Shown one piece after another: positions 6,201 through 20,296 of a stretch of 64,000 nucleotides of DNA. The notes under the pieces are model-generated. The model ran no database searches. It was not told the origin of the DNA and saw only the letters and a list, made by a program, of their open reading frames with translations. Within the stretch, counting starts at the first letter, position 1. Each line of letters starts with the position of its first letter. The position numbers were made by a program, and so were the translations under genes. The stretch lies in IMG/VR virus record IMGVR_UViG_3300017917_003143, positions 124,001-188,000 of that record; one strand, 5' to 3'.

Positions 6201-8301
6201 CAACGTCTGGGGCGATGACGAAGAACGTGAAAAACGCATCGCTGACAAAATAGACGAACTGTTTCCTGACGAAGATCCAGAACCAATATTGGCAGCTGGC
6301 GCAGGTGCTCCAAGATTTACCCGTAGTTCAGACCAAACAGCATATACACAAGAAAACGATTTATATGCCAAATACCGAGAAGCTTCAGATGCGGCCTATG
6401 AAGAGTTTGAAGCTGAAGCCGAGAGCGAATACGAAAACCAAGGGCACTACTACGACGAAGCTCGCGACTACTACTTTGAAATGATGCGAGAAGGCGGCGA
6501 CTACGATGAACGAGAGTTCTTGCGTGACAAGTATGGTTACATGAGCGAGATCGCCAGCAGTTTCACTCTTGATTGGCCTTATTGGACCGGGGGTGGTAAT
6601 TCAGGCTACGGCAGTAGAGATTGGGAAGATATCGCCACCAGCTTAGAACGTGCTGTGAGAATGGATGTCAAAGTAGGATCAGGCTATCACTCTGTGACCC
6701 GCCGAGACGATCGTTATATCATAGAACCTGACGGATCGTTAGACCCTGATGACTACGAGGATGCCGGTCTTGAAATCGTAAGTCCGCCAATGCCATTGCC
6801 CACGGCCTTGGACCAGTTGCAGAAAGTCATAGAGTGGGGCAACAATACAGCCGACGCCTATACCAATGATTCAACAGGTCTTCACATGGGCGTGAGCATA
6901 CCTTATGTGGGCGGTGATGTTGACTATGTCAAGCTGGTGTTGTTCATGGGCGACGAATATGTGCTAGAAAAATTTGGCCGTGCGTCAAACACCTACACAG
7001 CATCGGCCATGCAGAAGCTACGTCAAAACATGGCAGGTGCCAGAAACCGTGGCGAACTCACAGAAGCCAAGTTAGACCCCTTGGGTGCATTAGAGTTAGT
7101 ACAAAAGAATCTCATTGAGCTGGCCGCAAGATATGTGCAGAATGGTGTAGGTAATTCAAAATACACTTCAGCCCACATCAAAGATGGCTACATCGAGTTC
7201 CGTAGCCCCGGTGGAGACTACTTGGCCATGGAGAGCCGTGGCGAGTTTGATGACATCAAGAACACCATGTTGCGTTTTGCTCGTGCCATGCAGATCGCTG
7301 GCAACCCTGCTCTTGAGCGCAAAGAGTATGCCAAGAAACTCTACAAATTGATCTCACCAGGCGCACAAGACGATGGGTTAAAACTGTTTTCCCAATACGC
7401 CGCAGGTACTATCAGCCCTGAACAGCTCAAGAAGCAGTGGGCCGACGCTGTGCTACAGAAAGAGCTACCCACCACAGGCAAAGAAGAATACGAAGTCTAT
7501 AGCATGGATAAAAAGAATAGCCCCGACGGCATCATTGATACATTCTATGCCAGAGACTACGACAGTGCCTATGACCAGTACAGGAAGAAATACAGCAATG
7601 ATCCACGCTGGAACCAACTTGATGTGCGTTTAAAGATGCCTTGGTTTGATGTGTATGGACCCGACGGTGAGGAAGTCGCGACCATAAGATCTCGAGATAT
7701 CAATCAAGCCAAAGAAAAGGCCATGAACCAGTTTGAATACTGGTCAGACGATTGGAAAATATATCGCAGGCCCGATAACACACCCGAACCAAAGTTAAGT
7801 GTACGAGCTCAAGTGGCCAAGCGTATCAAAGAGCCTAAAGTAAGCCCAGCACAGGCCGCAGACAATGCCCGGGATTCCCAACAGCTACAAGCTCGCATAG
7901 GAGAACCACGACCCGCTGGTGCTGTGGGCGACACTGGCTACTATCGCGTGACTTGGGATGAACGCAGGGACGGTGAGATACGCAGTGATGCACTGAACAT
8001 AGATGCACCCAACGCCACAGCGGCCATGGATCGTGTGCGTGATGCACTGCAACTGCAAGGTCGAGATATCGTACAGATATCAGCTGATGCACAACAACCT
8101 CCAGCTTGGCGAGATCAATTGGCCCAACAAGTTCGTACAGCATCACCTCGCGCCAACTATGAATTGTATCAATACGATGATCCAACACGAGTAATAGGCG
8201 TGATGCATCATGCCACAGCTGATGAAGTACGTGCATACATTGATCAACAAGAACAAGAAGGCATGCCTCCAGGATTTTTACGAGTAAGACAGGTATCATG
8301 A
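3274..8301 (+). CDS. 1675 aa polyvalent protein: Pol-beta-type nucleotidyltransferase + HExxH zincin + amidoligase-like domain + repeats
   Basis: GS..SDIDLH (DID at 3499-3507); AHELTH (4357-4371); GFEAE/DGSL/GLEIVSPP/STGLHMGVS/IEFR. Confidence 0.75.
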   Translation: MDIYELDSYRLSDAVKFHTELNPALWDGKTMRPEVREALLKIADDFKTFMGIDDLAIEDITVSGSNTAFSYTPHSDIDLHLLVDFSKLNPDEVYQELFNAKKYQYNDQHDIKIRGYDVELYVQDSNKPVRSLGEYSIINNDWTRIPVQRRGNLDEKSTQSKYEKLKGLIELATNSDDLQQVTAVTDTLKKYRQAGLDEHGEFGPENLAYKILRTQGYVERLFKHKANLEDAKLSLAERKKKKTKSKKKFRYGAFGGYYYPGYGYYGQTDAVADGGGDGGGESVKESTVNVEKKSIPLDKVVRRFVHFAAKHLKLKQLPKIKLRKGELSHDIHSMGHYVDDKKTVEVETKDRHVMDILRTLAHELTHYRQHERLGKDMPDTAGRTGSPYENEANTLAGIIMRHFQNKYPEFFASTVSEDGDSVAAQYGDQTPPGPESKPTMPKGTVRVDVSDVYDWYKLGQNISNLDRVDPKIFGKGPPSTIVSFGDEETEHKYIDHLKKLGLTTTDIDPVDPNQPPGMPRQKVDPTYNVDETIDAPVSKDAKANLDYYKFIRGKQQLGRPLTKSEMQFLSKYQLAQHLKKQVGEQELEEGIGRALGTAAVAGAMALGSPAAKAQSPLQTAHNIGSIIYNKNITRAGAEEEIKGMARDLARGDQEIRVGGKRIWGGPQAQGERVAANGVGATPEAAFQDALNRAYTDANRRYGPISVGDWRPIDREKELEQVGGQYRAAVVIQGPAPVKEDASGYIPTKKQAKDPRFKTALTVDIKPGQLGKEANKLGLQTDSQGRPDLLMKNLANALKEYKETGVFEAVKPVAPVIPSRAPKTEYPPMVKQKTSLPQDKPTPRPDGTGRIINYEIREEEDLLEVKMSPSSLEAWARSPEAEGIRAGFEAEMIFRDTKREDDEEEMEPDYDYDERPDDIDHVVDFFSNDDYGYGLSSRGARSLREDLFNEFIEWADEQIAESWDNNAEDQVKDYMENNVWGDDEEREKRIADKIDELFPDEDPEPILAAGAGAPRFTRSSDQTAYTQENDLYAKYREASDAAYEEFEAEAESEYENQGHYYDEARDYYFEMMREGGDYDEREFLRDKYGYMSEIASSFTLDWPYWTGGGNSGYGSRDWEDIATSLERAVRMDVKVGSGYHSVTRRDDRYIIEPDGSLDPDDYEDAGLEIVSPPMPLPTALDQLQKVIEWGNNTADAYTNDSTGLHMGVSIPYVGGDVDYVKLVLFMGDEYVLEKFGRASNTYTASAMQKLRQNMAGARNRGELTEAKLDPLGALELVQKNLIELAARYVQNGVGNSKYTSAHIKDGYIEFRSPGGDYLAMESRGEFDDIKNTMLRFARAMQIAGNPALERKEYAKKLYKLISPGAQDDGLKLFSQYAAGTISPEQLKKQWADAVLQKELPTTGKEEYEVYSMDKKNSPDGIIDTFYARDYDSAYDQYRKKYSNDPRWNQLDVRLKMPWFDVYGPDGEEVATIRSRDINQAKEKAMNQFEYWSDDWKIYRRPDNTPEPKLSVRAQVAKRIKEPKVSPAQAADNARDSQQLQARIGEPRPAGAVGDTGYYRVTWDERRDGEIRSDALNIDAPNATAAMDRVRDALQLQGRDIVQISADAQQPPAWRDQLAQQVRTASPRANYELYQYDDPTRVIGVMHHATADEVRAYIDQQEQEGMPPGFLRVRQVS

Positions 8302-9074
8302 GAGCATCTGAATTTTCAAACTCCAAGCTGGTGATCTTTGACATTGATGATACCTTGGTCAACACAGATACACGGGTAAATGTCGTGCGAGATGGCGAAG
8401 TGATCAAGCAACTCAACAGCCACGATTTTACACACTATAAATTAGGCCCTGGTGAAGAGTTTGACTTTGGTGCGTTCAAAGACGCCAGAGAATTCTTTAC
8501 CAAGGCCAAGCCAATACCTGGTATGATTCGACAACTAAAGCATGACATCGACACAGGAAATAAAGTTATCATGCTCACTGCCCGTAGTGATTTCAATGAC
8601 CGAGACATATTCTTAGATACTTTCCGACGCTTTGGTATAGAAATGGATCGTGTGCATGTGTATCGTGCCGGCAACTTGACCATCAAAGCTGCCACAGAAG
8701 AAAAGAAAAAGATCATGTTGCGTCATTTGTTGGGCAAGACGCACTATGACAAAATTATAATGTATGATGACAGTGTGCCTAATTTAAATGCATTTATAAG
8801 TCTTAAACAAGAATACCCTTGGAGCAAATTTTATGCTTGGCATGTGGATCCCAATGGGCAAGCCAGTGAATACCACAGAACAGATATGGAAGAAAACTTT
8901 CACGATGGCCGAGTAAAAGGCAAAAGTCGCCCAGGACGTGTCAAACGTGCAGGTGCCAGCTGTGCAGGAAGTGTCACGGACCTACGAGCAAAAGCCCGTA
9001 AATATGGCGGCGAGCGAGGCAAGATGTATCACTGGTGTGCCAACATGAAGAGTGGTCGCAAAAAGAATAAGTAA
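8298..9074 (+). CDS. HAD-superfamily phosphatase (PNK-phosphatase-like) plus basic Cys-containing tail
   Basis: LVIFDIDDTLV, MLTAR, MYDD motifs. Confidence 0.75.
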   Translation: MRASEFSNSKLVIFDIDDTLVNTDTRVNVVRDGEVIKQLNSHDFTHYKLGPGEEFDFGAFKDAREFFTKAKPIPGMIRQLKHDIDTGNKVIMLTARSDFNDRDIFLDTFRRFGIEMDRVHVYRAGNLTIKAATEEKKKIMLRHLLGKTHYDKIIMYDDSVPNLNAFISLKQEYPWSKFYAWHVDPNGQASEYHRTDMEENFHDGRVKGKSRPGRVKRAGASCAGSVTDLRAKARKYGGERGKMYHWCANMKSGRKKNK

Positions 9075-9080
9075 TACATT

Positions 9081-9263
9081 ATGCGAGCACAAGAACTCAC
9101 TGGACACAAATGGATCTCCAAGATCACCATCAAGAACCCTAACTACACAGGCAGGGTTGAAGTGTCGGTGTATGCTCACAATCAAAGTGAAGCACGACAA
9201 CTGTTAAAAGCACAGTACGGCATAGAAGATCATCACATTGGCGCCATCAGGAGAGCTCAATGA
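9081..9263 (+). CDS. small MRAxE-type protein
   Basis: 60 aa, starts MRAQEL. Confidence 0.7.
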   Translation: MRAQELTGHKWISKITIKNPNYTGRVEVSVYAHNQSEARQLLKAQYGIEDHHIGAIRRAQ

Positions 9264-9577
9264 GAGCCACTGAATTTGTCGCTGAAGATCTCAATGCCGG
9301 TGGATTCCGTATCCGTGTGAGTCCGCACTTGGAAAACCGCGCAGAGAAGCGTGGCATATCCATGCCCGTGATTGTAGGCATACTCAATAGGCTGGATCGT
9401 GCCCGTAGACATATCAAAGAGTTGGATCCTAACACACAATTTAATATTTTTGATAGCCATCACAACATACACCTTGGCATGATGCGTTCAGCATTTGATC
9501 CCAACAAACTGTTGTTGAACACAGTGTATCAAAATGAAAACTATCACGGGCGTAATCCTGTGTTGAAGGTACGGTAA
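9260..9577 (+). CDS. MRAxE-type protein, possible DUF4258/BECR-like nuclease
   Basis: VSPHLENRAEKRGIS resembles H-x3-R-x3-R-x-I motif. Confidence 0.4.
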   Translation: MRATEFVAEDLNAGGFRIRVSPHLENRAEKRGISMPVIVGILNRLDRARRHIKELDPNTQFNIFDSHHNIHLGMMRSAFDPNKLLLNTVYQNENYHGRNPVLKVR

Positions 9578-10179
9578 TGAGAGCATGGGAGTTGGGTGAG
9601 GTGCAGATACTACGCAAGGTCCAGAAAAAAGGCCGCAATCTCTATCAATTGCCTCGCCGTGGAAAGCCTATACCACAGGGTTGGGAATCTGAATATCTTG
9701 GTTTTCCAGTGGGTCGTACCAGCGGGCTAGAAATATGGCAGTTCAATGAAGGTCCTGTGACATCATACACTGTGTTTGATCCTGAGTCACGCAGAGCCAC
9801 CCTGACTATCAGTGGAAGCAAGTACCCTGACAATCCTGACAGTTTCATCGTGTTTGGTCTATATGCCGCACCTGGCAATCCTGTGCGAGCCGCAGACTTT
9901 TACCGATATCTTATTACCAAGCAAGGCTTGACCATGATATCTGATCGACTGCAGAGTCCAGGTGGATTGCGAGTGTGGCAAGAGTTGGAACGTAGATTTC
10001 CACAGAGCGTCACTGTATACGGGTTTGATACCAAGACCGATGAACCCATAAACATTTCAACACAAGACACATCAGACACACACGTAGAACCCGATGAGGT
10101 AGATCAAGCCGCACCTGGCATGAAGCGAGATCTACAGCATAAAGCACGTTACATTAGATTGGTAGCCACAGCAAGATGA
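9577..10179 (+). CDS. MRAxE-type protein, possible GNAT-like fold
   Basis: FYRYL...SDRLQSPGGLRVWQEL pattern. Confidence 0.35.
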   Translation: MRAWELGEVQILRKVQKKGRNLYQLPRRGKPIPQGWESEYLGFPVGRTSGLEIWQFNEGPVTSYTVFDPESRRATLTISGSKYPDNPDSFIVFGLYAAPGNPVRAADFYRYLITKQGLTMISDRLQSPGGLRVWQELERRFPQSVTVYGFDTKTDEPINISTQDTSDTHVEPDEVDQAAPGMKRDLQHKARYIRLVATAR

Positions 10180-10814
10180 GAGCACAAGATTTTATTCCTA
10201 CCAATCGAGAGTTTATACTCTATATCAACGGACGACCTGCAGTAAAGTATCAGCACGAAGGTGATGCCTTGCGAGACATGGATCACCTACGAAGAAAAGA
10301 TCCTAACACACGATTAGAGCTCAAACATGAAGTGTGTGGCATTGAAACTCTCCGCAAGATCAACGAATACAAGATTAACAATCAATCAGGCATCGGTTCT
10401 GTGCCCAAGAATCAAGACATTGATTATTTTGGACTGCGTGTGGCCATGCGCCCTAGCACGTTCCTTAAGCTCAGTCTGCCTTTGCCCAATACGCCTCAAG
10501 ATCAGCAGTCTATCGAATATGTCAAACAACACAAAGACACCGAAGGTATAGGCGCACCTTTCCTGGAAATAGACGTTCCTCAAGGCTGGGAGTCCGGTGA
10601 TTTATCTAAACCTGCCAGGGTGGTAGGGCACGATGGACGACACAGGATGGCTGCTATATTGCAGAGCGAAGGCGACGATCCTGTGGAAACACACATATTC
10701 CCTTTGGGACTGCGCCGCCGTCATTTTGATGCCAATCCTGAATGGGCCAAAGAACTCAATCAAGTCATCATTGGCCAGCGCGGCAACACTGTGCCAGGCC
10801 CTATTTTTAAGTAA
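10176..10814 (+). CDS. ParB/Srx-like domain protein
   Basis: VVGHDGRHRMAAI (DGxHR). Confidence 0.6.
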   Translation: MRAQDFIPTNREFILYINGRPAVKYQHEGDALRDMDHLRRKDPNTRLELKHEVCGIETLRKINEYKINNQSGIGSVPKNQDIDYFGLRVAMRPSTFLKLSLPLPNTPQDQQSIEYVKQHKDTEGIGAPFLEIDVPQGWESGDLSKPARVVGHDGRHRMAAILQSEGDDPVETHIFPLGLRRRHFDANPEWAKELNQVIIGQRGNTVPGPIFK

Positions 10815-11862
10815 AGTAATCCTCGAGAGTACCTTTGCGTTTCACGTCTAACGTGACACAGTGGAATCCACCGCTGAGGGTGCGGCTCTGGCGCATGGGC
10901 AATCCAATGCTTTCAATACCCCAACGCTGTAGTTCTCGCATGAGTTCTGTTTGATTTTCATCCACTATGACCAAGCGTTCGTTGACGCTGAGCAAGTTCA
11001 ATCCTATGTACTTGCTACAAGGACTGATGCCACCAGCAAGATTGCTGCCAACATCAGGAACTTTTTCTCCGGGCCAAAAGATCTTGTCCCAGGATTCAAA
11101 GATCGGTGGATACCAGTCGGGTGTGCAACGGTCGCCATTGAACAACACCAGGCCTGGACGCAAAGGAATCACTGTAGAGTCAAAGTGTGCGAAACTGTAA
11201 TACTTTTCTGCCAAGTGTATGCGATACTTGTCTCCGATGATGCTCTTGAGCCATTGATAACCTAACAAGTTTCCGCTGTTGCTGACTTGGTACAGCAGGT
11301 CTCGGCCCAGTCGCACGATGTTGGGAGCATCAAACACTATCTCTCGATTGAGCAAAGTTGGATCTTCGAGATTGTCCAGCTGATAGCTGTCATCAGCCAA
11401 GACAGGTTTGGGTGCTGAAATCCATTTGGTACCATCGGCCATCCACTCATACAGCATGTCTCGATAGATGCGTGTTTCAAAATATCGACTGCGCATAGGG
11501 CTTGGACATTCAATGATCATGCCGTCCAATGGCAACAGCAAGTCTCGCGGACAGTAGCTATACCAACCCGACGTGGTCCACTCAGGAGTGGAAAATTTCG
11601 CGCTGTGATCTTGAGGTATGGGCCTGCGTACTTTGACGCCCAATTTTTTGAGCTCATCGCTGAGACGATCAAGATCCTCATTGGCTTCATCGATGATGCG
11701 CCGATCATGTGGTCCTTCGAGATGTTGGATATTTTCCCAAGGTTCGTTGGCATAGCAAAAGCTGTGTGTGCTTTTGTTCAAGGTGGGCAACTGTGCATGG
11801 TCAGCGATTCCGACCACTATTTCTTCCAAGGGATCCCAGTCATTGTGACTGCATACGGGCAT
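10807..11862 (-). CDS. amidinotransferase (glycine/inosamine-phosphate amidinotransferase family)
   Basis: DPLEEIVVG, CPRD, FDAPN, HFDST, GGFHC (Asp/His/Cys triad). Confidence 0.9.
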   Translation of the reverse strand: MPVCSHNDWDPLEEIVVGIADHAQLPTLNKSTHSFCYANEPWENIQHLEGPHDRRIIDEANEDLDRLSDELKKLGVKVRRPIPQDHSAKFSTPEWTTSGWYSYCPRDLLLPLDGMIIECPSPMRSRYFETRIYRDMLYEWMADGTKWISAPKPVLADDSYQLDNLEDPTLLNREIVFDAPNIVRLGRDLLYQVSNSGNLLGYQWLKSIIGDKYRIHLAEKYYSFAHFDSTVIPLRPGLVLFNGDRCTPDWYPPIFESWDKIFWPGEKVPDVGSNLAGGISPCSKYIGLNLLSVNERLVIVDENQTELMRELQRWGIESIGLPMRQSRTLSGGFHCVTLDVKRKGTLEDYFT

Positions 11863-12691
11863 AACGTTCTCCTATTTCTTGTGATATACAAACACGGTTC
11901 CATTGGCTACCGCGGTTAAATTCTTGATATTGTTCTCCCCCGAGCCCAAACAAAATACATTTGGTAGGTTCAAGGTCCAATTCTTTGACTACTTGATCAT
12001 AGATATCTTCGTAGGTTTTCCAGTTCCAATCTATGCTGTGATTCTCCATGAAATCTATGGCACAAGCCATGCTGTGTCCGGGTACTTGATGATTTTTATT
12101 AAAAAAATCAATTCCATCATCGATGTCTTCCCGTTGCCATCTGATGCCTGCACGTAAAAACTGTGCTCCATGGAATGCTTTGCTGATGCTGGATGCCACG
12201 GTTTCGATACAAGCATGAGATAGATCCACTGAGAGATCTTTGCTGATAGCGATGTAAGCCATGTCTACCAACACAGGAATACCCAACTGTGTACATTTCC
12301 TCATGAGTGCATCCATGTCAGGATGCACATCGCCGAGGTCGCTGAATGGGCAACTGATTACCACAGCATCATTTTCGTGCAAAGGTTCATCATCGATATA
12401 ACACCAGTCAATGGCATTTTTCAAGCAGACCTGGTGATACATAAATTCCCCACGGAAAAATCTCATCCTGCGAGTGTGGTGTTTGAGATAAAAATGATCA
12501 AAGGCCTGCACGGATCCGTGGCAAAATGATGCATGGGTGAACTGATCAAAACCGTGGAGTTGGAACGACCCTCCTTTGACCCATGATGTAAAAGTTTTGG
12601 TATAAATTCCCAATAAATCTTCGTGCTGTACCGGCACTGGATTTAATTTTACCGAATCATTTTGTATGGGAAAGGCGCTACGGAGTGGCAT
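11840..12691 (-). CDS. PLP-dependent (fold type I) transferase-like enzyme
   Basis: VLVDMAY and SSISKAF motifs. Confidence 0.65.
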   Translation of the reverse strand: MPLRSAFPIQNDSVKLNPVPVQHEDLLGIYTKTFTSWVKGGSFQLHGFDQFTHASFCHGSVQAFDHFYLKHHTRRMRFFRGEFMYHQVCLKNAIDWCYIDDEPLHENDAVVISCPFSDLGDVHPDMDALMRKCTQLGIPVLVDMAYIAISKDLSVDLSHACIETVASSISKAFHGAQFLRAGIRWQREDIDDGIDFFNKNHQVPGHSMACAIDFMENHSIDWNWKTYEDIYDQVVKELDLEPTKCILFGLGGEQYQEFNRGSQWNRVCISQEIGERYARMQSQ

Positions 12692-12694
12692 GAT

Positions 12695-12731
12695 GATTTA
12701 TATATGGTTATTGTGCTTGCGGACTTAAATA
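12695..12731. promoter_or_regulatory. divergent late-type promoters
   Basis: TATAAATC on minus (12695-12702); TTAAATA on plus (12725-12731). Confidence 0.55.
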
Positions 12732-12735
12732 TATC

Positions 12736-13293: not shown

Positions 13294-13326
13294 ATTAAAT
13301 ACGTTATACCAAACAGCGAGGGTATC

Positions 13327-13590
13327 ATGTACAACTATCAAGCCCTGTTCGAACAGCTCGTTCCAGAGGATTTTGAAAGCTCAGTGGCACCAAGATCTAA
13401 ATCGATCAACACCAAACACAAAGCCGCTGCCTACCTTGGCAAGGACATCGACGAAACGATGAATCCCACAGATTTTAAACGTCTGCGAGCCAAGGCCAAT
13501 AAAATGAAAAAGTCTCAAAACAAAGCCATCCGGGCACGTGGGGCCAAACTCAGTAGACAGCTATCGTGGTACAACAATTTCCATAATTGA
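13327..13590 (+). CDS. small basic hypothetical protein
   Basis: 87 aa, upstream TAAATA and GAGGG. Confidence 0.6.
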   Translation: MYNYQALFEQLVPEDFESSVAPRSKSINTKHKAAAYLGKDIDETMNPTDFKRLRAKANKMKKSQNKAIRARGAKLSRQLSWYNNFHN

Positions 13591-13609
13591 CCAGTCATTA
13601 AACACGCGG

Positions 13610-13623
13610 TAAATATCTTTATG
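13610..13623 (+). promoter_or_regulatory. late promoter/start unit TAAATATCTTTATG
   Basis: identical 14-mer at 63569-63582. Confidence 0.6.
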
Positions 13624-13920
13624 AAAAATAAATTTGTCAAGGTCAATTTTGATTTGCACTGCGACTGGAATAAAGCGCCGCCTGTTTATCGAGTCTATGT
13701 TGGGCATGAGCTTTTTACAGAACGCACTTATATCTGGGGCGTGACACAGTTCCTCCAGGAAATATTACAGTTAAATGCTCCTCCAGGAAAATACACTATC
13801 AGGGTGGATAATCTCGGTGATCCTGAGTGCCAATTTAAAATACGCAACTTGACAGCGTCGCACGGTCCTGTGCGTATACTTGACAGCAAAACCTTTGAGA
13901 TTACCAATGAGAGCGCATGA
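13621..13920 (+). CDS. hypothetical protein
   Basis: 99 aa; TAAATA 5 nt before ATG. Confidence 0.7.
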   Translation: MKNKFVKVNFDLHCDWNKAPPVYRVYVGHELFTERTYIWGVTQFLQEILQLNAPPGKYTIRVDNLGDPECQFKIRNLTASHGPVRILDSKTFEITNESA

Positions 13921-14089
13921 ATTCATAGTGGAAACCACGGTTAGCGGCGGCATAGCCCCTGTGGTCATGCCCATAGGAGACATGCTGTCAAGAACCCAGC
14001 CTACAGCGCCCGTAGATAAATATAAAAAGAATTCAAGAAAGAAGAAACCCAATGCTGTCAGACGATTTGAAAACTCTATTAGCCAGTAA
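13907..14089 (+). CDS. small MRAxE-type protein (MRAHEFIVE)
   Basis: start moved to ATG 13907 on the motif. Confidence 0.65.
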   Translation: MRAHEFIVETTVSGGIAPVVMPIGDMLSRTQPTAPVDKYKKNSRKKKPNAVRRFENSISQ

Positions 14090-14492: not shown

Positions 14493-14493
14493 C

Positions 14494-15348
14494 ATGGCTG
14501 ATTTACGCAAGATCCTTGAATCCTTCTCCCGTATAGAACAAGAAAGCCTCAGCTCTCAGCAAAAGAGCGTGAAGCAACTGCCTGCCCTGTTCAAGCCACA
14601 AAAAACATCTCCACAGTTATCAGGCCCATATCCTGGCAAGAATGCCACCTTGGGTTATCTAGTGGGCGAAGGTGATGAGCAAGGTTATGGCAGTGAAGTT
14701 GGGGATACTGGCGCAGATGAAACACCAGATGGCGTAGATCCAGACACCAAATCATTCCTTGAAGGTAGATTAACAAATCCAGGTGAGCAAGACACTCCTG
14801 TGGCACAGGCTATAATACGTCGCATACTCACACAGAGACTTGACCTATTGTCTAAATACGGCCCTGAGTTGGTTGGCAGTGCTGTTGACGATGTCGCTGA
14901 CTGGGTTGGTGATGTAGAAGAAATAGGTACCAGTGATGTCAGTGGGTGGGTCAATCAAGTTGAACGCATGCTCAAAGAAAATCCACCTGAAGCGTTTGGT
15001 CTGTCAGAAGCACAAGCCACCGAAGACGTCATCTCTACAGTAAAGAAAAAGCTGGGCGACTATCTGTCCGACTTATCAAAAGAAATCAAATCAGACTCTG
15101 ACTTAAAAGACAAAATTCCGCAGGATGTAGATAAAATTTCTCCTGCTGTAAAGACCATTACAACTGATGATGGTAAAGAAATCAAGATACACGGCAACGA
15201 AGATGATGGTTTCCGTATCACCATACGAAATAAACCACACTCGGCAACTTTTGAAAGCCTGGACCATGCTGTCATGGCCTGTGAGATGTATTTGAATCGC
15301 CGCAGAATGCGCATGCCACACAACGAAGATTACTTGGAAGAACAATAA
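14494..15348 (+). CDS. modular hypothetical protein
   Basis: 284 aa; segments bounded by VGE/FLE/LSE/LEE. Confidence 0.7.
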   Translation: MADLRKILESFSRIEQESLSSQQKSVKQLPALFKPQKTSPQLSGPYPGKNATLGYLVGEGDEQGYGSEVGDTGADETPDGVDPDTKSFLEGRLTNPGEQDTPVAQAIIRRILTQRLDLLSKYGPELVGSAVDDVADWVGDVEEIGTSDVSGWVNQVERMLKENPPEAFGLSEAQATEDVISTVKKKLGDYLSDLSKEIKSDSDLKDKIPQDVDKISPAVKTITTDDGKEIKIHGNEDDGFRITIRNKPHSATFESLDHAVMACEMYLNRRRMRMPHNEDYLEEQ

Positions 15349-18300
15349 TGAATTTACTGAACTTGATCGAAGACACTACCACAGGTTACGATAACTTACG
15401 AGCCTTGATGCAAGCCTCGCAATCAGGGCAGGATGCTGTGCTTACAGTGGGTGGCGAAACTGTTACCTTGGATCCAATGGAAACACGTTGGATGTTTGGC
15501 AAATACAAAGCGTTCAACAAAGCCGGCCGCCAAGAAGAATTCTTGAATCACTTGGCTGATCCTGTGAAATTTGATCAGCACATGAAACAACTGCGCCAAC
15601 TCATTGACAAACAAAAGAACTTCCGTGGCTCAGTGCCCGGTGAGCGTGGTGTGGAAGAAAACATAGTGGCCGGCATCGTTGGCCATGAGATTAAAAAATT
15701 CCTTGACGAGCCTACCCCCAACAATAATGTAGCAGAAGAAGAAGCAGTAGAAGAAATTGCCATGAACAATCCCGATCAACCCACTGCGCAAACAGCAGGT
15801 AAGATCAACTGGGAACGCATGATCAAAGATTACATGGACAATAAACCCTACAGTGAATTTGAATTCCCTAGTGATCGTCCACTCACACTTTATCGTTCGC
15901 AAGTCTATGCCATACTCAAAGACTTTGGACGCATGAAGCCGCAACAAAAAGTCAACTTGATTCTTAATACCTTTGGTGACAAGTATGCCATGGTTGATTA
16001 CATCGACAAACTGCGTAGCAAAGGCATGATGCCCAAGAAAGTTCCTGCGTACAAAGCTCCCGGTGTTGAAGCGCCAGCTCCTGGTCAGATGACGTTGCCT
16101 GGTATGGATGTTCCCAAGATCAAAGAAGCCCAGGCTCAAAAAAAAAATTCTGACAAAGCAGGTTTAGACCGCGATACCGCGATAAACCCCAGAGTAGCTC
16201 GTGCTCTACAGTTGGCCCGAGCTCGACAGAGCGCAGCCGGCAGTGACATTGAAGCCTTTGTACAAGACGAACTAGAAAAAGCTCAGTCTGCACAGGCGCA
16301 GATCGATCAACTTGAAAAAGACAATCAACAACAGGCTGATCAGATATCACGCTTGTCGTCACAGCTATCTCAGCAAGATCAGGAAATACAACAGATCAAG
16401 AGCCAGCCAGAGCCAGAACCTCAATCACCTGCTCCAGCAGTGCAACCGGCACCTACACCAGCACCTGCTGAGCCTGATGCCAAGGCTCAACCAGCTCCTA
16501 AATCCACCGAGCCTGCCAAGACTGAACCCACAGCAGAACCACAACCCGTGCCTGTGCCACAACGGCAACCTGCGCCCAAGGCCAAGAAAACACCCAAAAA
16601 ACGTACCACTCGTAAAAAGGCTCCAGCAACTACGCCTGACAATGTCATACCATTTCCAGGCAAGAAAAAAACACCCGCAGATGATGAATTGTCAGCGGCC
16701 TTGCAAGGTGTTGACATGGATTCCGACGATCTGTTTGCCCGAGCAGTGGGTATGAACGAAGACACTGGCGATCTGAATGTTGGCGATCCTGTGATCATCC
16801 GTGGCAACGTAGAGTTTGAAGGCAAGACCGGCGATGTCGCAGGTTTTGGACGAGACAAACACTTTGTCATAGTGGATCTGTATAACTTTGGCAAACATGC
16901 GTTCCATGCTTCCAATGTCAAGTACAACGAATATGCTGATCAAGAAGTAGACGAAGGACGTTTAAAAAACGATGAACTCGAGCGCCAGTGGCAAGCTGGA
17001 CAACAGGCCACACGCAGTTTCCAGAATCGCGAACGCACTGCTGGTGAAGAAGAACCAGTAGGTGACTTCCGTGTGGTACGCCGCAAAGATGGTGTAGTAG
17101 GCGATCTCAAACAGCACTACAGTTCCAACGAAGCATTCCGTCATGCACGAGCACTCAAGAAAAAATATCCCAGCATGGAAGTAGGTGTGAAGTGGCCTAC
17201 AGGACAAATCAACTGGGTAGGACTGACCTTTGAGGACGATGTCACAGAGATGCAGACCAAGCTGGACAGATACAATGTCAATCAGCCTCCTCCGGGCGGT
17301 ACCAACAAGCAACGTGAACAGTTTTTAGATGCTCGAGACAAGTTGTTCCGATTGATGAAAAATGCTTCTACAGCAGACAAAGAAGTTATCAGACTCAAGA
17401 TAGCAGATCTAGAAGCCAAGGCACAGGCCAAAGGTATCAAGATACGAGAAGCTGGAGAGTTTAATCGTAGTGGATACAATGCCATCAAAGATGTCAGCGA
17501 CTGGCGTGAAAAAATCCGTGTGATGCAAGAGCTTATGAAGGATCGTGCTCTTATGAGCGATCCCGAAGCCAAAGCGGCCATTGAACAACGCATTGGAGAT
17601 CTGATCCGTGTGGGCCAAGAACAAGGCTATGTCACAGAAGCTCTCAGCGATAAAGCTATGTCTGTATTACGTGGACTCAAGAGCCAACCACAAGCCACCC
17701 AACCTGCCGCAATGGATCCTGCTAAACAAGCAGAGGTTGATGCTTGGGCACGAGATGTTGAGCGCAATCTTGCTCCTAAACTAAAACCACAAGCAGTCGC
17801 AAAGCCTGCGATTGACCTCAATGTTCCTCAACCAAAAAACATTGAAGATACGTTGCCTGATGATTTGCCAACCTTGCAACGTCGCATCAAGCAGTTGGAC
17901 GAGTTGATCAAAATGAAAGAGATGATCGACAAGTTATTCTTGAAAGCACAGAATGTGCGTGGTGGCATCTATCCAGGCTTGCAAAGTGACATCGAAGACG
18001 AAGAGATGTACGGTGTTCCAACCAATGATCAAGACTTTGAGGAATTGAAAAACAAGTACACACGAGACTTGGCAGCACTGCAAAAGTTTTTGGCCATGAA
18101 GAAGGCTGTGTATCGTGAAGATGAAGAACTCGTCGGCGAAAGCGCCGCTCTTGTAAGACTACAACGAGCACGTCAGCAGTTGGCACAGCAAGGCGTGGCA
18201 GAAGCACAAACAGATTATCAAAAGCGTAGACAGCGTGAGCGTGATGTAGACGCAGGTAAGCCTGTGAGCCGTCAACCCAAGAATCCACAGAATGACTATT

Positions 18301-18653
18301 TTGCTCGCCGCAAAAAAGAAAAAAAGCATGACATGGAAGAGCAGAAAGACAAAGCCGGCAATCCAATGTATCGCCGTGAAGAAGTCTACATGGTAGTACA
18401 CAATGGCAAGGAAGTAGCATTCTACAAACCCGAAAGCATGGCACGAGCCTACAGCGATGCCGAAGATCTCGTCAAGCGTTTTGGTGGCGAAGCTCATGTA
18501 AAGAAAGTCATGCGCGAAGCAAAAAAGAAAGATCGCAGTCCAGGTAAGATAACCAAGAGCGAAGATCCTTGCTGGTCAGGTTATCACATGGTAGGCAAGA
18601 AAATAAAGAACGGTCGTGAAGTTCCTAACTGCGTACCGGGTAAGAAAGGTTAA
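15348..18653 (+). CDS. 1101 aa modular protein: coiled coil, Pro/Ala/Gln-rich linker, KOW/SH3-like module, basic C-terminal modules
   Basis: ORF track; VGDPVII..G..G.V pattern; PAP-rich tract about 16390-16630. Confidence 0.75.
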   Translation: MNLLNLIEDTTTGYDNLRALMQASQSGQDAVLTVGGETVTLDPMETRWMFGKYKAFNKAGRQEEFLNHLADPVKFDQHMKQLRQLIDKQKNFRGSVPGERGVEENIVAGIVGHEIKKFLDEPTPNNNVAEEEAVEEIAMNNPDQPTAQTAGKINWERMIKDYMDNKPYSEFEFPSDRPLTLYRSQVYAILKDFGRMKPQQKVNLILNTFGDKYAMVDYIDKLRSKGMMPKKVPAYKAPGVEAPAPGQMTLPGMDVPKIKEAQAQKKNSDKAGLDRDTAINPRVARALQLARARQSAAGSDIEAFVQDELEKAQSAQAQIDQLEKDNQQQADQISRLSSQLSQQDQEIQQIKSQPEPEPQSPAPAVQPAPTPAPAEPDAKAQPAPKSTEPAKTEPTAEPQPVPVPQRQPAPKAKKTPKKRTTRKKAPATTPDNVIPFPGKKKTPADDELSAALQGVDMDSDDLFARAVGMNEDTGDLNVGDPVIIRGNVEFEGKTGDVAGFGRDKHFVIVDLYNFGKHAFHASNVKYNEYADQEVDEGRLKNDELERQWQAGQQATRSFQNRERTAGEEEPVGDFRVVRRKDGVVGDLKQHYSSNEAFRHARALKKKYPSMEVGVKWPTGQINWVGLTFEDDVTEMQTKLDRYNVNQPPPGGTNKQREQFLDARDKLFRLMKNASTADKEVIRLKIADLEAKAQAKGIKIREAGEFNRSGYNAIKDVSDWREKIRVMQELMKDRALMSDPEAKAAIEQRIGDLIRVGQEQGYVTEALSDKAMSVLRGLKSQPQATQPAAMDPAKQAEVDAWARDVERNLAPKLKPQAVAKPAIDLNVPQPKNIEDTLPDDLPTLQRRIKQLDELIKMKEMIDKLFLKAQNVRGGIYPGLQSDIEDEEMYGVPTNDQDFEELKNKYTRDLAALQKFLAMKKAVYREDEELVGESAALVRLQRARQQLAQQGVAEAQTDYQKRRQRERDVDAGKPVSRQPKNPQNDYFARRKKEKKHDMEEQKDKAGNPMYRREEVYMVVHNGKEVAFYKPESMARAYSDAEDLVKRFGGEAHVKKVMREAKKKDRSPGKITKSEDPCWSGYHMVGKKIKNGREVPNCVPGKKG

Positions 18654-18658
18654 TAATA

Positions 18659-18757
18659 ATGAGAACATATAACTTTACTGTCAACGGTGTCATACATACT
18701 ATACTGGCAGAGAACTTCAATGCCGCACTAGATAAACTCAAGCAGTTGATAAAATAA
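18659..18757 (+). CDS. 32 aa microprotein MRTYNFTVNGVIHTILAENFNAALDKLKQLIK
   Basis: fills the gap exactly; stop abuts ATG 18758. Confidence 0.6.
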   Translation: MRTYNFTVNGVIHTILAENFNAALDKLKQLIK

Positions 18758-19165
18758 ATGAGAAACTATATCAATTTGATGGAAGCTCTGGAAAAAGGTT
18801 GTCCACCAGCAACACAGAGCATCAAACTCAATCTTGAAAATCGCCAAAAGGCCATAGATGAGTATGGCCACGGTCCATTGAATCCCAATGAGCCCAATGA
18901 AGAGTTTTGGCAAGCCAAGGCTGACGAGTGGAACATATCTAATCCTGAAGATGCTAAATCAGCACGTTGCGGAAACTGTGCGGCGTTTGACATGAGTGAT
19001 GACATGATGGACTGTATCGCTAAAGGCATTGGTGCAGAACCTGGAAGTGATCCTCATGACACCATTGATGCTGGACATTTAGGTTATTGTAAGTTTCTCA
19101 AGTTTAAGTGTGCGGCCAAACGTACCTGCGATGCTTGGGTAGAAGGCGGACCTGTAACAAAATGA
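18758..19165 (+). CDS. Cys-rich protein, HiPIP-like Fe-S motif
   Basis: CGNCAAF...GYC...CDAW. Confidence 0.5.
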   Translation: MRNYINLMEALEKGCPPATQSIKLNLENRQKAIDEYGHGPLNPNEPNEEFWQAKADEWNISNPEDAKSARCGNCAAFDMSDDMMDCIAKGIGAEPGSDPHDTIDAGHLGYCKFLKFKCAAKRTCDAWVEGGPVTK

Positions 19166-19692
19166 GAGCTCAAGAATTTGTCAGCGAAAAGTGGAGCGAG
19201 AAATACAAACGCTCTATCAACTGTGCCAATCCCAAAGGATTCAGTCAACGAGCCCACTGTCAAGGTCGCAAAAAGAATGAAGATTTAAATGAATTCGCTC
19301 CAAGTGACAGCGGCGATGGTGATGACGGATTCAGTGATGACATGTTAAAACATCTTGCCGCACAGTGGTGGCACGGTGATGAAGACCCTAGAGTAGAACA
19401 AATACTGGCTGCGGCTGGTTGGGAAATAGGTCAAGACGAAGGCTACGACAATGGCGGAGTGTTTGTTGTACGAGCAGGAGATGTCAATGGCAACAGTTTT
19501 ATAAGTTGGCCAGCAGAAGAACTTGAAGTTGATCTGGAAGAACAGTTGACTTTCAAGGGCTCTCCTTGTACAGTAGATTGTTCAGGGCACAGAGCAGGTT
19601 ATGATTGGAGCCGCCGCAAAGGCATGCGTGTTCCAAATTCTTGGAGCCAGAGTTTCAACAACGGCGCCGCACTACACAGAGCAGGCAAATGA
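19162..19692 (+). CDS. MRAxE-type modular protein (MRAQEFVSE)
   Basis: start moved to ATG 19162; three modules split at NE/EE. Confidence 0.7.
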   Translation: MRAQEFVSEKWSEKYKRSINCANPKGFSQRAHCQGRKKNEDLNEFAPSDSGDGDDGFSDDMLKHLAAQWWHGDEDPRVEQILAAAGWEIGQDEGYDNGGVFVVRAGDVNGNSFISWPAEELEVDLEEQLTFKGSPCTVDCSGHRAGYDWSRRKGMRVPNSWSQSFNNGAALHRAGK

Positions 19693-19760
19693 ACGAATAC
19701 CCAGTGTACCCCGAAGATGACGGTTCGGATCGTCCAAGAAATCCCTACAGCCCAGTATGA
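19689..19760 (+). CDS. 23 aa microprotein MNEYPVYPEDDGSDRPRNPYSPV
   Basis: ATGA overlaps at both ends. Confidence 0.55.
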   Translation: MNEYPVYPEDDGSDRPRNPYSPV

Positions 19761-20296
19761 GATTAAACGAGATACAACTAGGTCGTAGCGTAACCTACAA
19801 TTTCTACGATATCTACAAATTAGTACAACAACGACAAGGTCGCCCTGGCTTGACCATACGTCTGCGCGATGACCGTCCGGCAGAAACTCGCAAGAGTGGC
19901 ATCTATGTTTGGAAGCATCCTGACTGGGGTTACTTCTACGTGGGCATTGCCGCTGCCGACAACTTCACAGCACGTTGGCACAAGCACATACAAAAACTCC
20001 TGGATCAATGCACATCGGCCGCACAGATGCACAACTGGAAACAGTTTGCTGACCGGTTTGCCGCGGCTGGTTACGGCATCAATGATTTAAAAGATGTACA
20101 ACTGAGATTCTATCCCATTACCACTGTAGCACAACACGGCAACAAAGAATTGTTAAAACAAGAACTCAAAGCCATAGAGGATCGATTGACTGCTTGGCTC
20201 AACCCGGCATGCAACTATCAGCACGATCCTTCTCGACCCAGTGCTACTAAGTACCCACAACCAAGAAATGTTACACCTGACCAACAACAAGTTTAA
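19757..20296 (+). CDS. GIY-YIG family endonuclease
   Basis: SGIYVW...FYVG...RW..H. Confidence 0.75.
   Translation: MRLNEIQLGRSVTYNFYDIYKLVQQRQGRPGLTIRLRDDRPAETRKSGIYVWKHPDWGYFYVGIAAADNFTARWHKHIQKLLDQCTSAAQMHNWKQFADRFAAAGYGINDLKDVQLRFYPITTVAQHGNKELLKQELKAIEDRLTAWLNPACNYQHDPSRPSATKYPQPRNVTPDQQQV

What the first reader, a model, noticed from the sequence alone, without database searches (positions are those of the whole stretch)
8298..19790. Shared N-terminal 'address tag' (M-R-A-x-E-F/L) on unrelated proteins: a capsid-targeting cargo system
Seen: eight ORFs with unrelated bodies start alike. They are MRASEF (8298, HAD), MRAQEL (9081), MRATEFVAE (9260), MRAWELGE (9577), MRAQDF (10176, ParB-like), MRAHEFIVE (13907), MRAQEFVSE (19162) and MRLNEI (19757, GIY-YIG). 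None occurs in the 21-64 kb zone. Known: T4 internal proteins carry a roughly 10-aa capsid-targeting sequence (MKTYQEFIAE) that the prohead protease removes after Glu. Inference: this phage tags a set of enzymes for head packaging and injection at infection.
Basis: partly seen in the sequence, partly recalled or inferred. Interest (0 to 1): 0.85.

Follow-up and report, generated by a model that had tools for sequence, protein, structure and literature searches.

The report
Shared capsid-address tag on phage proteins
Eight unrelated proteins of an uncultured 344-kb relative of phage T4 start with the same short peptide (M-R-A-x-E-F), which closely resembles T4's capsid-targeting leader and probably marks proteins that are loaded into the phage head, so it could be used to list such cargo proteins in uncultured phages.

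Summary
In a six-frame scan of the window, M-R-A-x-[E/D]-[F/L] follows an ATG seven times, against 0.14 expected. All seven are on the + strand between 8298 and 19162. MRLNEI at 19757 is a diverged eighth copy.

The protein bodies are unrelated. Synonymous codons vary within the tag, so selection acts on the peptide.

The window comes from a 343,632-bp metagenomic contig of a jumbo phage related to T4. Its DNA polymerase is 50% identical to that of Sinorhizobium phage Phosso.

The tag is common elsewhere. More than 120 viral contigs carry MRAxEF(I/L/V)xE on at least 83 unrelated protein families. Conservation stops at residue 9. These contigs carry T4-type gp17, gp18, gp19, gp4, gp32 and UvsX.

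T4's experimentally proven capsid-targeting leader (MKTYQEFIAE, MKTFKEF...) shares the EF-hydrophobic-x-E core. A parallel MKTFK(Q/E)F tag is common in cyanophage-like T4 relatives, sometimes between the portal and prohead-protease genes. It sits on the same cargo families as the MRA tag.

One MRA-tagged family is homologous to a virion protein of phage PA5oct that was detected by mass spectrometry.

Packaging, cleavage and injection were not tested, and this phage's own prohead protease was not found. Verdict: a new variant of the T4 capsid-targeting system. Confidence 0.65.

The parts
8298..9074 (+). Tagged protein 1 (258 aa), starts MRASEF. HAD/PNK-phosphatase-like, with DxDxT at residues 15-19. 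Has a basic C-terminal 60-aa module that is shuffled among relatives.
9081..9263 (+). Tagged protein 2 (60 aa, pI 9.9), starts MRAQEL with a CGA Arg codon. Homologues L017 and L118 start MKAQDF and MRA...
9260..9577 (+). Tagged protein 3 (105 aa, pI 10.2), with the full tag MRATEFVAE.
9577..10179 (+). Tagged protein 4 (200 aa), starts MRAWELGE. Weakest match to the tag profile.
10176..10814 (+). Tagged protein 5 (212 aa), starts MRAQDF. A 55-aa inserted module is followed by a ParB/sulfiredoxin-like core with the GHDGRHR motif. In about 100 homologues the tag is fused directly to the core.
13907..14089 (+). Tagged protein 6 (60 aa, pI 10.4), with the full tag MRAHEFIVE. Not called by JGI. Overlaps both neighbouring genes. 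Conserved in L017, L077, L089 and L117.
19162..19692 (+). Tagged protein 7 (176 aa), with the full tag MRAQEFVSE followed by the Cys module WSEKYKRSINCANPKGFSQRAHC. In T4-like cyanophages this module sits behind MKTFKQFQE or MKSFKQFQE.
19757..20296 (+). Tagged protein 8 (179 aa), starts MRLNEI. GIY-YIG nuclease family. Its orthologues keep M-[RK]-[IL]-x-E-[IV], and a few carry MRSQEFVSE or MRAKDFTVE.
3274..8301 (+). Untagged 1675-aa multi-domain ('polyvalent-like') protein directly upstream. Contains a nucleotidyltransferase, an HExxH zincin-like module (about residues 298-411) and an amidoligase (about 1119-1386). In relatives the last two modules occur as separate MRA-tagged proteins.
15348..18653 (+). 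Untagged 1101-aa low-complexity protein. Its modules, including the C-terminal CWxGY...NCVP motif, recur in tagged proteins elsewhere. Starts MNLLNLIE, with a hydrophobic-x-E ending at residue 8.
13327..13590 (+). Untagged basic 87-aa protein, starts MYNYQALFE (L-F-E ending at residue 9). The same module forms the C-terminal extension of tagged homologues P0002 and P0024. Possible looser member.
14494..15348 (+). Untagged acidic 284-aa protein, starts MADLRKILE (I-L-E ending at residue 9). Possible looser member.
18758..19165 (+). Untagged 135-aa protein, starts MRNYINLME. Its orthologue in L209 starts MRNLIDLVE. Possible looser member.

Best explanation
The N-terminal peptide M-R-A-x-E-F-(I/L/V)-x-E, often shortened to M-R-A-x-E-F, is this lineage's version of the T4 capsid-targeting sequence. 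It is a short, flexible leader that binds the scaffolding core of the prohead. Any protein carrying it is therefore enclosed when the shell forms.

Where the leader ends in hydrophobic-x-Glu, a T4-type prohead protease probably removes it. Where it does not, it probably stays on.

The cargo is a shuffled set of small modules: a HAD/PNK-like phosphatase, a ParB/sulfiredoxin-like domain, a GIY-YIG nuclease, basic Cys-rich peptides and, in relatives, zincin-like, amidoligase and lysozyme-like domains. In other phages these modules are fused into large multi-domain proteins. They are presumably released into the next host together with the DNA.

Shown here: the tag exists, it is under peptide-level selection, it is strictly N-terminal, it is independent of the protein body, it is specific to one lineage of T4 relatives, and it shares cargo families with T4-type leaders.

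Inferred: binding to the scaffold, cleavage, presence in virions, and ejection.
For: 1. Seven exact copies against 0.135 expected, confined to one 12-kb cluster, on unrelated bodies.

2. Synonymous codons vary, and flanking DNA is unrelated.

They hold 203 tagged ORFs in 83 non-redundant families. Information content is high at positions 1-3, 5-7 and 9 and at background from position 10. In 41 MRA-starting ORFs that the search pattern did not select, 34 have E/D5 with F/L/I6 and 19 have E9.

4. The tag is never internal. It stays at residue 1 when modules are inserted behind it or when linker length varies. AlphaFold gives residues 1-8 pLDDT below 50, consistent with a flexible leader.

5. T4-superfamily context: DNA polymerase is 50% identical to Phosso and 47% to Atu_ph07. 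Tag loci carry gp17 (23 loci), gp18 (8), gp19, gp4 (11), gp13, gp32 and UvsX. Their TerL is about 50% identical to Phosso's.

6. In the T4 record, ipII and ipIII start MKTYQEFIAE, ipI starts MKTFKEFTST, and gp24 starts MAKINELLRE. These leaders direct packaging and are removed by gp21 (PMC5694885, PMC3012670, PMC12373910).

7. An MKTFK(Q/E)F scan gave more than 120 loci and 86 non-redundant bodies, with E10 in 78 of 132. 56 loci carry T4 or cyanophage hallmark genes, including gp20-gp23. Tagged ORFs lie between gp20 and gp21 in L289, L310 and L320, and next to gp23 in L225.

8. The same cargo sits behind both tags. 27 MKTF-tagged proteins match MRA-tagged bodies or window-cluster proteins, and six PHROG families are shared. 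No MRA tag occurs in the MKTF loci.

9. PA5oct EST35_0205 is a structural protein found by ESI-MS/MS and starts MKLFEVF. It is homologous (E 1e-17 to 1e-21) to the MRA-tagged proteins L001 (429 aa), L105 (448 aa) and L209:9117, the last of which lies in the syntenic counterpart of the window cluster. PA5oct encodes a prohead core scaffold/protease, gp152.

10. Modules that are tagged as separate proteins in relatives are domains of the window's untagged 1675-aa and 1101-aa proteins. This fits the logic that each separate protein needs its own address.
Against: - No prohead protease, scaffold, portal or major capsid gene of this phage or of any MRA-tag locus was seen. Only contig positions 114-198 kb were read.
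- No MRA-tagged gene was found inside a head-gene cluster. Eighty loci around Phosso-type capsid genes hold only one MRA tag.
- Five of the eight window tags lack the hydrophobic-x-E ending at residue 9.
- The cluster sits among chaperone and replication genes, not structural genes.
- There is no T4 late-promoter consensus in the window.
- The virion evidence comes from a distant cultured phage whose own leader differs.
- A ClpA gene is syntenic with the cluster, which leaves room for a different reader of the tag.
Confidence: 0.65

Rival explanations
1. The tag is read by the phage's own Clp machinery rather than by the scaffold. It would be an N-terminal recognition signal for the phage-encoded ClpA-like unfoldase, with ClpS, serving either timed degradation of these proteins or unfolding and threading.
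For: - A 756-aa ClpA-like gene (Clp_N, two AAA modules, ClpB_D2-small) lies with DnaJ and peptide deformylase. It ends about 4 kb upstream of the 1675-aa gene and about 9 kb upstream of the first tagged gene.
- The same order is kept in the relative L209.
- ClpA homologues occur in 5 MRA-tag loci and in none of about 200 T4 or MKTF loci.
- A ClpS gene lies next to gp13 in L335 and L336.
- If the tag were cut after Glu5, the new N-terminus would be Phe or Leu. These are the classical ClpS N-degron residues (own knowledge).
- Iyer et al. suggested that jumbo-phage ClpA or ClpX may translocate proteins during assembly (PMC7824862).
Against: - The tag is equally common in loci of about 171-kb T4-like contigs where no Clp gene was seen nearby.
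- The parallel MKTF leader works in T4, which has no ClpA.
- ClpA was found in only 5 of 120 tag loci.
- No known Clp recognition motif matches M-R-A-x-E-F (own knowledge).
Confidence: 0.12
2. The tag targets proteins somewhere other than the head interior, for example to another assembly intermediate, the membrane or a replication compartment, or it is bound by a dedicated chaperone.
For: - The tag is N-terminal, independent of the protein body, and disordered.
- In relatives, tagged genes lie next to tail and neck genes (gp18, gp19, gp4, gp13) as well as gp17.
- No head gene was found adjacent.
Against: - It shares the EF-hydrophobic-x-E core with the one leader whose target is known, the T4 prohead core.
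- It shares cargo with MKTF-tagged genes that lie between gp20 and gp21.
- The tag is charged, not hydrophobic, so it is not a membrane or secretion signal.
Confidence: 0.1
3. The similarity reflects a constraint on the mRNA or on translation initiation (a favoured start region with ATGA coupling and an A-rich second codon), not a function of the peptide.
For: - Codon 2 is AGA in 7 of the 8 starts.
- 4 of the 8 starts overlap the upstream stop as ATGA.
- Upstream Shine-Dalgarno motifs are weak.
Against: - All four Ala codons are used, as are both Glu and both Phe codons, in proportions close to the gene bodies.
- Arg is also encoded by CGA.
- Leu6 is encoded by CTC and TTG, so what is conserved is the residue class.
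- 75 other genes of the window, with the same translation needs, lack the motif.
Confidence: 0.04
4. The shared 5' ends are inherited rather than functional. They would be leftovers of duplication followed by replacement of the body, or short homologies that mediate cassette exchange.
For: - Modules are clearly shuffled behind a constant start.
- The T-even internal-protein loci are known hotspots of gene replacement (PMC12373910).
Against: - The shared DNA is at most 27 nt with degenerate third positions, and the flanks are unrelated. This is too little for homologous exchange.
- The motif persists across TerL divergence of about 50% and on at least 83 families. That requires purifying selection on the peptide.
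Confidence: 0.04

Closest known systems
Capsid-targeting sequence (CTS) of the phage T4 internal proteins IPI, IPII and IPIII, and the short propeptides of gp24 and Alt
   Same: - A leader of about 10 residues at residue 1 of otherwise unrelated, non-essential proteins encoded in clusters.
- The same core: T4 has M-K-T-Y-Q-E-F-I-A-E, and this phage has M-R-A-x-E-F-(I/V)-x-E.
- Both have a full form ending in hydrophobic-x-Glu and a short form. T4 ipI starts MKTFKEFTST; here, for example, MRASEFSNSK.
- Both occur in phages of the T4 superfamily.
   Different: - One residue shorter, with Arg-Ala in place of Lys-Thr.
- A different, deep-branching lineage: TerL is about 30% identical to T4 gp17 and about 50% to Phosso's.
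- A much larger and more enzymatic cargo set: 8 genes in 12 kb here and at least 83 families overall, against 3 in T4 and about 10 described in T-even phages.
- Cargo is built from modules that are elsewhere fused into giant proteins.
- No experimental evidence exists for this tag.
MKTFK(Q/E)F-type leaders in cyanophage-like T4 relatives (seen here in viral contigs; no description was found in the searched literature)
   Same: - The same architecture and the same cargo families: the WSxKYKxSIxCxNPKGFSQRAHC module, 95-aa and 87-aa basic proteins, and PHROGs 727, 3477 and 10346.
- Also ends in Glu, at position 10.
   Different: - The sequence class is that of T4 itself.
- It is found next to gp20, gp21 and gp23 in some contigs.
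- It never occurs together with MRA tags in the loci read.
Long N-terminal propeptides of ejection and inner-body proteins in phiKZ-like giant phages (SPN3US, 201phi2-1)
   Same: N-terminal targeting regions on head-internal proteins. They are removed by a prohead protease that cuts after Glu. Paralogues share conserved N-termini (PMC5694885).
   Different: Those propeptides are 80-130 residues long and variable. The cleavage motif is (S/A/G)-x-E. The phages are not close relatives of T4.
Polyvalent proteins of phages and conjugative elements (Iyer et al. 2017, as cited in PMC7824862)
   Same: The same kinds of domains (zincin-like peptidase, ParB-like, GNAT, nucleotidyltransferase) and the same presumed fate, delivery into the host with the DNA. 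The window's 1675-aa protein has that architecture.
   Different: Here most modules are separate small proteins, each with its own short leader, rather than one long fusion.
Cargo-loading peptides of encapsulins and bacterial microcompartments (own knowledge)
   Same: A short, transferable peptide that docks unrelated enzymes inside a protein shell.
   Different: Encapsulin cargo peptides are typically C-terminal. They bind the shell protein, not a scaffold. They are not evolutionarily related and are not ejected.

Membership tests
T4-type capsid-targeting sequence | A short leader at residue 1 shared by proteins with unrelated bodies | tested here: met
   Eight window proteins, with no body similarity at E below 0.05. 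At least 83 non-redundant tagged families in other contigs. The tag is never internal.
T4-type capsid-targeting sequence | Sequence resembles the T4 leader M-K-T-[YF]-x-E-F-hydrophobic-x-E | tested here: met
   T4 ipII and ipIII start MKTYQEFIAE. The tag consensus is MRAxEF[ILV]xE. Met, the basic residue, the small residue, E-F, the aliphatic residue and the final E all match with a one-residue gap. This resemblance was not given a statistical score.
T4-type capsid-targeting sequence | Leader ends in a prohead-protease site (Leu/Ile-x-Glu) | tested here: inconclusive
   3 of the 8 window tags end in V/I-x-E at residue 9, and one has L-G-E ending at residue 8. 19 of 41 MRA starts not selected by the search pattern have E9. 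T4 ipI also lacks the site at residue 10.
T4-type capsid-targeting sequence | The phage has a T4-type head assembly system (gp21 protease, gp22 scaffold core, gp23 shell) | tested here: inconclusive
   T4-type gp43, gp17, gp18, gp19, gp4, gp13, gp32 and UvsX are present in the lineage. No gp20-gp24 was found in the 83 kb of this contig or in the 120 tag loci. Related cultured jumbo phage PA5oct has a prohead scaffold/protease.
T4-type capsid-targeting sequence | Tagged proteins are found in virions with the leader removed | not testable with these tools
   Indirect only. PA5oct EST35_0205 and EST35_0202 were detected in virions by ESI-MS/MS. They are homologues of an MRA-tagged and an MKTF-tagged family respectively.
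T4-type capsid-targeting sequence | The leader is sufficient to package a foreign protein | not testable with these tools
   Needs a tag-reporter fusion in a phage that uses this tag.
Polyvalent (multi-domain, injected) phage proteins | A very large protein that strings together several unrelated enzymatic or anti-defence domains | tested here: met
   Window 3274-8301 (1675 aa) contains a nucleotidyltransferase (its L209 orthologue hits NTP_transf_2 at 19.8 bits, just under the 21-bit cut-off), an HExxH module and an amidoligase (21.8 bits, just under the 22-bit cut-off). Each also occurs as a separate protein elsewhere. This applies to the neighbouring gene, not to the eight tagged proteins.
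Polyvalent (multi-domain, injected) phage proteins | Contains a virion-anchoring domain (such as MuF) or is shown to be packaged | tested here: not met
   Pfam and PHROG searches found no MuF-like or other head-anchoring domain.

The most novel reading that the evidence does not exclude
The tag may be read twice. First it would act as a capsid address. Then the phage's own ClpA/ClpS system would read it. One version has the syntenic ClpA-like unfoldase loading tagged proteins into the prohead. The other has a cut after Glu5 exposing Phe or Leu, an N-degron, so that injected effectors are destroyed on a timer. Either version would be a new link between Clp chaperones and phage cargo delivery.
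Probability: 0.1. Interest if true: 0.85.

Novelty: new variant of a known kind. Interest (0 to 1): 0.68.

Why it matters
If the tag is a capsid address, a nine-residue pattern is enough to list the head-packaged, probably injected proteins of a large, uncultured lineage of T4 relatives. A sister pattern would do the same for cyanophage-like T4 relatives.

Injected proteins are the first phage products to meet host defences. In T4, all three internal proteins turned out to be inhibitors of Type IV restriction enzymes (PMC12373910). A sequence-only handle on at least 83 such families (nucleases, a phosphatase, ParB/sulfiredoxin-like, lysozyme-like and zincin-like domains, and many small basic proteins) would give a ready candidate list for counter-defence and host-takeover functions.

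It would also extend the T4 protein-packaging vector idea to other capsids. And it would show how multi-domain 'polyvalent' proteins and sets of small tagged proteins convert into one another.

Tried and rejected
- Megablast of window 8-20 kb against 50,697 phage records: no match.
- tblastn of a common 131-aa tagged protein against cultured phages: no match.
- T4 late promoter TATAAATA: 0 sites in the window. The generic promoter and terminator scans were not above shuffles.
- Search for gp20-gp24 in the window and in 120+ tag loci, using BLAST and jackhmmer profiles built from about 200 T4-like loci: nothing found.
- The search for related loci with T4 gp21 returned only close T4 relatives and cyanophage-like contigs, with no MRA tags.
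- The search for related loci with the Phosso major capsid protein returned 80 loci at 70-86% identity, with a single MRA tag. This did not reach the tag-using lineage.
- Walking the source contig 10 kb to the left and 9.5 kb to the right found no head genes and no tags.
- One contig look-up failed because the ORF start was wrong.
- A profile of the ParB-like family against PDB sequences gave no hit. Foldseek gave only weak sulfiredoxin and ParB-like matches.
- Literature searches for the tag strings MRAxEF and MKTFKQF found no paper describing them.
- Paralogy of the eight bodies was rejected.
- A post-hoc count of hydrophobic-x-E ending at residues 7-12 gave 8 of 22 genes before 20.3 kb against 8 of 65 after it (p = 0.02). 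This is suggestive only.

Full report
**1. The observation**

The mechanical ORF list and a six-frame scan confirm all eight starts at the stated coordinates. M-R-A-x-[ED]-[FLIV] directly after an ATG occurs seven times in the 64 kb. All seven are on the + strand between 8298 and 19162. 200 shuffles give a mean of 0.135 and at most 2.

The eighth start, MRLNEI at 19757, is looser. Its orthologues conserve M-[RK]-[IL]-x-E-[IV] ahead of a linker of variable length. A few of them carry MRSQEFVSE or MRAKDFTVE, so it is a diverged member rather than chance.

A weight-matrix scan of 3,228 candidate starts adds no further strong member. About 91 genes can be drawn in the window, and none beyond 20.3 kb has the tag. 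Nor does the 10 kb upstream or the 9.5 kb downstream on the source contig.

The eight bodies are unrelated by BLASTP.

At the DNA level the shared stretch is ATG AGA/CGA GCN NNN GAR/GAT TTY/CTC/TTG. All four Ala codons are used, and the flanks are unrelated. In 168 tags from other contigs, synonymous codon use at Ala3, Glu5, Phe6 and Glu9 is roughly like that of the gene bodies. Selection therefore acts on the peptide. The AGA preference at codon 2 is partly a by-product of ATGA stop/start overlaps, seen at four of the eight starts.

**2. What the window is**

The window is positions 124,001-188,000 of a 343,632-bp JGI metagenome contig. It has no close DNA relative among 50,697 phage records.

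Its family-B DNA polymerase is of the T4 gp43 type. The best matches are the jumbo phages Sinorhizobium phage Phosso (50%), Agrobacterium phage Atu_ph07 (47%), Vibrio phage 2.275.O, XaC1, CBB and GAP32.

The tagged cluster lies between two blocks. On one side are a chaperone block (DnaJ, peptide deformylase, a 756-aa ClpA-like protein) and a 1675-aa multi-domain protein. On the other side are replication genes. Contig L209, from another sample, is syntenic with the window. It keeps the same order and has its own set of MRA-tagged genes.

**3. The tag outside the window**

Many loci hold 2-5 tagged ORFs. The 203 tagged ORFs fall into 83 non-redundant body families.

Information content is near maximal at positions 1-3 and 5-6, high at position 7 (I/L/V) and position 9 (E), and at background from position 10 on.

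The search pattern fixed several of those positions, so I also examined 41 MRA-starting ORFs in the same loci that the pattern had not selected:
- 34 have E/D5 with F/L/I6.
- 29 have I, L or V at position 7.
- 19 have E9.

There is therefore a full form and a short form of the tag, in the same proportion as in the window.

The tag is never internal. In the family of the 10176 protein, about 100 of 120 homologues carry M-[RK]-[AS]-x-E-F-[IL]-x-E fused directly to the conserved core. The window copy and its closest relatives have a 55-aa module inserted between the tag and the core. AlphaFold models the core confidently (mean pLDDT 80) and leaves residues 1-8 below 50, as expected for a flexible leader.

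**4. Lineage**

The tag loci carry T4-type genes:
- large terminase (23 loci), sheath (8), tube and gp4 head-completion protein (11);
- on longer contigs, gp13, gp32 and UvsX.

Their terminase is about 50% identical to Phosso's, about 33% to a cyanophage's and about 30% to T4 gp17. The tag therefore belongs to a deep branch of the T4 superfamily. That branch includes genomes from about 170 kb to more than 500 kb.

**5. Link to the T4 capsid-targeting sequence**

From the T4 record itself:
- ipII and ipIII start MKTYQEFIAE.
- ipI starts MKTFKEFTST.
- gp24 starts MAKINELLRE.
- gp22 starts MLKEQLIAE.

The literature states that these N-terminal leaders direct packaging into the scaffolding core and are removed by the gp21 protease. 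It also states that T-even internal proteins share nothing but the leader, and that new ip genes have been found by detecting it (PMC5694885, PMC3012670, PMC12373910).

With a one-residue gap, the window's consensus matches the T4 leader at Met, the basic residue, the small residue, Glu-Phe, the aliphatic residue and the final Glu.

A bridge between the two exists in nature. The N-terminal module of the 19162 protein (WSEKYKRSINCANPKGFSQRAHC) occurs in T4-like cyanophages as a 40-52-aa protein starting MKTFKQFQE or MKSFKQFQE. It is encoded just upstream of the large terminase gene, between a tail-fibre gene and the terminase in phage Bellamy.

- 132 tagged ORFs with 86 non-redundant bodies, and Glu at position 10 in 78 of them.
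- 56 of 120 loci carry T4 or cyanophage hallmark genes, including gp20, gp21, gp22 and gp23.
- In three contigs the tagged ORF lies between the portal and protease genes, where T4 keeps its prohead-core genes 67 and 68.
- In another contig an RlpA-like tagged protein follows gp23.

The two tag classes do not mix, since no MRA tag occurs in the MKTF loci. They do sit on the same cargo. 27 MKTF-tagged proteins match MRA-tagged bodies or window-cluster proteins in at least five families, and six PHROG families are shared. A leader that changes with the phage lineage while the cargo stays the same is what a signal read by a lineage-specific receptor should look like.

**6. Experimental anchor**

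Two proteins of the cultured jumbo phage PA5oct are annotated as structural on the basis of ESI-MS/MS of virions:
- EST35_0205 starts MKLFEVF. It is homologous (E 1e-17 to 1e-21) to MRA-tagged proteins of 429 and 448 aa, and to the MRAQELLSE protein in the syntenic counterpart of the window cluster.
- EST35_0202 starts MKSFRDY. It is homologous to an MKTF-tagged protein, and to an MKTLNEY protein in an MRA-lineage contig.

PA5oct encodes a prohead core scaffold/protease (PMC7318152).

**7. The cargo**

- 8298 is a HAD/PNK-phosphatase-like protein.
- 10176 has a ParB/sulfiredoxin-like core (GHDGRHR motif; weak Foldseek matches to sulfiredoxin and PadC).
- 19757 is a GIY-YIG protein.
- The other five have no recognisable fold.
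- Six of the eight are basic, with pI 9.1-10.4.

Modules are shuffled freely. The C-terminal 60 residues of 8298, the C-terminal domain of 19162 and the core of 10176 each occur elsewhere as 'tag plus module' mini-proteins or inside larger tagged proteins. The HExxH and amidoligase domains of the untagged 1675-aa protein, and pieces of the 1101-aa protein, occur in relatives as separate MRA-tagged proteins.

This is the domain repertoire of the 'polyvalent' proteins that are thought to be injected with phage DNA (PMC7824862). Elsewhere, tagged proteins include lysozyme/chitinase-like enzymes and members of PHROG families annotated as 'virion structural protein'.

**8. What remains open**

I did not find the prohead protease, scaffold, portal or capsid genes of this phage or of any MRA-tag locus. 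No MRA-tagged gene was seen inside a head-gene cluster.

Only 3-4 of the eight window tags end in a protease-type site. For the HAD protein, a cut beyond the tag would damage the active site. Some tags probably stay on.

Expression timing is unknown.

A ClpA gene is syntenic with the cluster. ClpA occurs in five other MRA loci and in none of about 200 T4 or MKTF loci, and a ClpS gene occurs in another MRA-lineage contig. A Clp-read tag is therefore the main rival. It could also be an additional layer on top of capsid targeting.

**9. Verdict**

It rests on convergent comparative evidence, not on any direct test. This is a new sequence variant, in a new lineage and with a much larger cargo set, of a mechanism known from T4. 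The searched literature holds no description of either the MRAxEF tag or the environmental MKTFKQF tags.

Noticed in passing
L207:5667-9169 (source contig 119.9-123.4 kb, just upstream of the window); also L209:1-2430; L094, L051, L066, L010, L004; L335:3553-3906: A phage-encoded DnaJ, peptide deformylase and 756-aa ClpA-like unfoldase lie just upstream of the window; ClpA ends about 9 kb before the first tagged gene. The order is kept in a relative. ClpA occurs in 5 MRA-tag loci and in none of about 200 T4 or MKTF loci. A ClpS gene lies beside gp13 in another contig of the tag-using lineage.
   Followed up: partly
window 3274-8301: A 1675-aa protein combining a nucleotidyltransferase domain (a separate protein in cyanophages and Maribacter phages), an HExxH zincin-like module and an amidoligase domain (shared with RsoM2USA and Atu_ph07). 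At the spot where relatives have 'tag then KKRKRK...WAAY', this protein reads ...LSLAE-RKKKKTKSKKKFRYGAFGGYYYPGYGYYG. The junction therefore keeps a Leu-x-Glu.
   Followed up: partly
window 18560-18650 (C-terminus of the 1101-aa protein); window 19189-19260; L249, L239, L232: Small Cys-containing modules (CWxGY...G(K/R)xVPNCVP and WSxKYKxSIxCxNPKGFSQRAHC) recur at about 60-90% identity across very distant phages, including cultured cyanomyophages. They occur both free behind a leader and inside larger proteins such as Bellamy gp123.
   Followed up: partly
window 13907-14089: A conserved 60-aa tagged gene that the JGI annotation missed. It overlaps the end of 13621-13920 by 14 nt and the annotated start of the ferritin/Dps-like gene 14052-14492 by 38 nt, so the true start of one of these genes may differ.
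   Followed up: no
window 10807-12691, minus strand: Two minus-strand genes interrupt the otherwise + strand tagged cluster. One (351 aa) has no family hit. The other (283 aa) is weakly aminotransferase-like.
   Followed up: no
L289, L310, L320 (between gp20 and gp21); L225:5138-5554: In cyanophage-like T4 relatives, MKTFKEF-tagged small proteins sit between the portal and prohead-protease genes. An MKTFKQF-tagged RlpA-like (double-psi beta-barrel) protein follows the major capsid gene, which hints at a head-packaged cell-wall enzyme.
   Followed up: partly
window 18659-18757: A 32-aa ORF starting MRTYNFTVNG has a 40-aa counterpart (MRTYTFNHTN) at the same position in the syntenic relative L209, so it is probably a real small gene.
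   Followed up: no
window 2232-2261: A near-consensus sigma-70-type promoter (TTGACC, 18 nt, TATAAT; 11 of 12) lies upstream of gene 2300. From there, tightly packed + strand genes run into the tagged cluster. No T4 late-promoter consensus occurs anywhere in the window.
   Followed up: no
window 36101-38005 and 38-53 kb: A subtilase (Peptidase_S8) with a signal-peptide-like N-terminus, followed by a long run of small genes. The window also holds two radical-SAM enzymes: a SPASM-domain one upstream at 20995-21999 and a B12-binding one at 48888-50813. This looks like an auxiliary-metabolism or modification island.
   Followed up: no
L421:14712-19080 (source contig 191-195.6 kb): Peroxiredoxin (AhpC-TSA), a carboxymuconolactone-decarboxylase-family protein, and two periplasmic solute-binding proteins (TctC, DctP) are encoded on the phage contig.
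   Followed up: no
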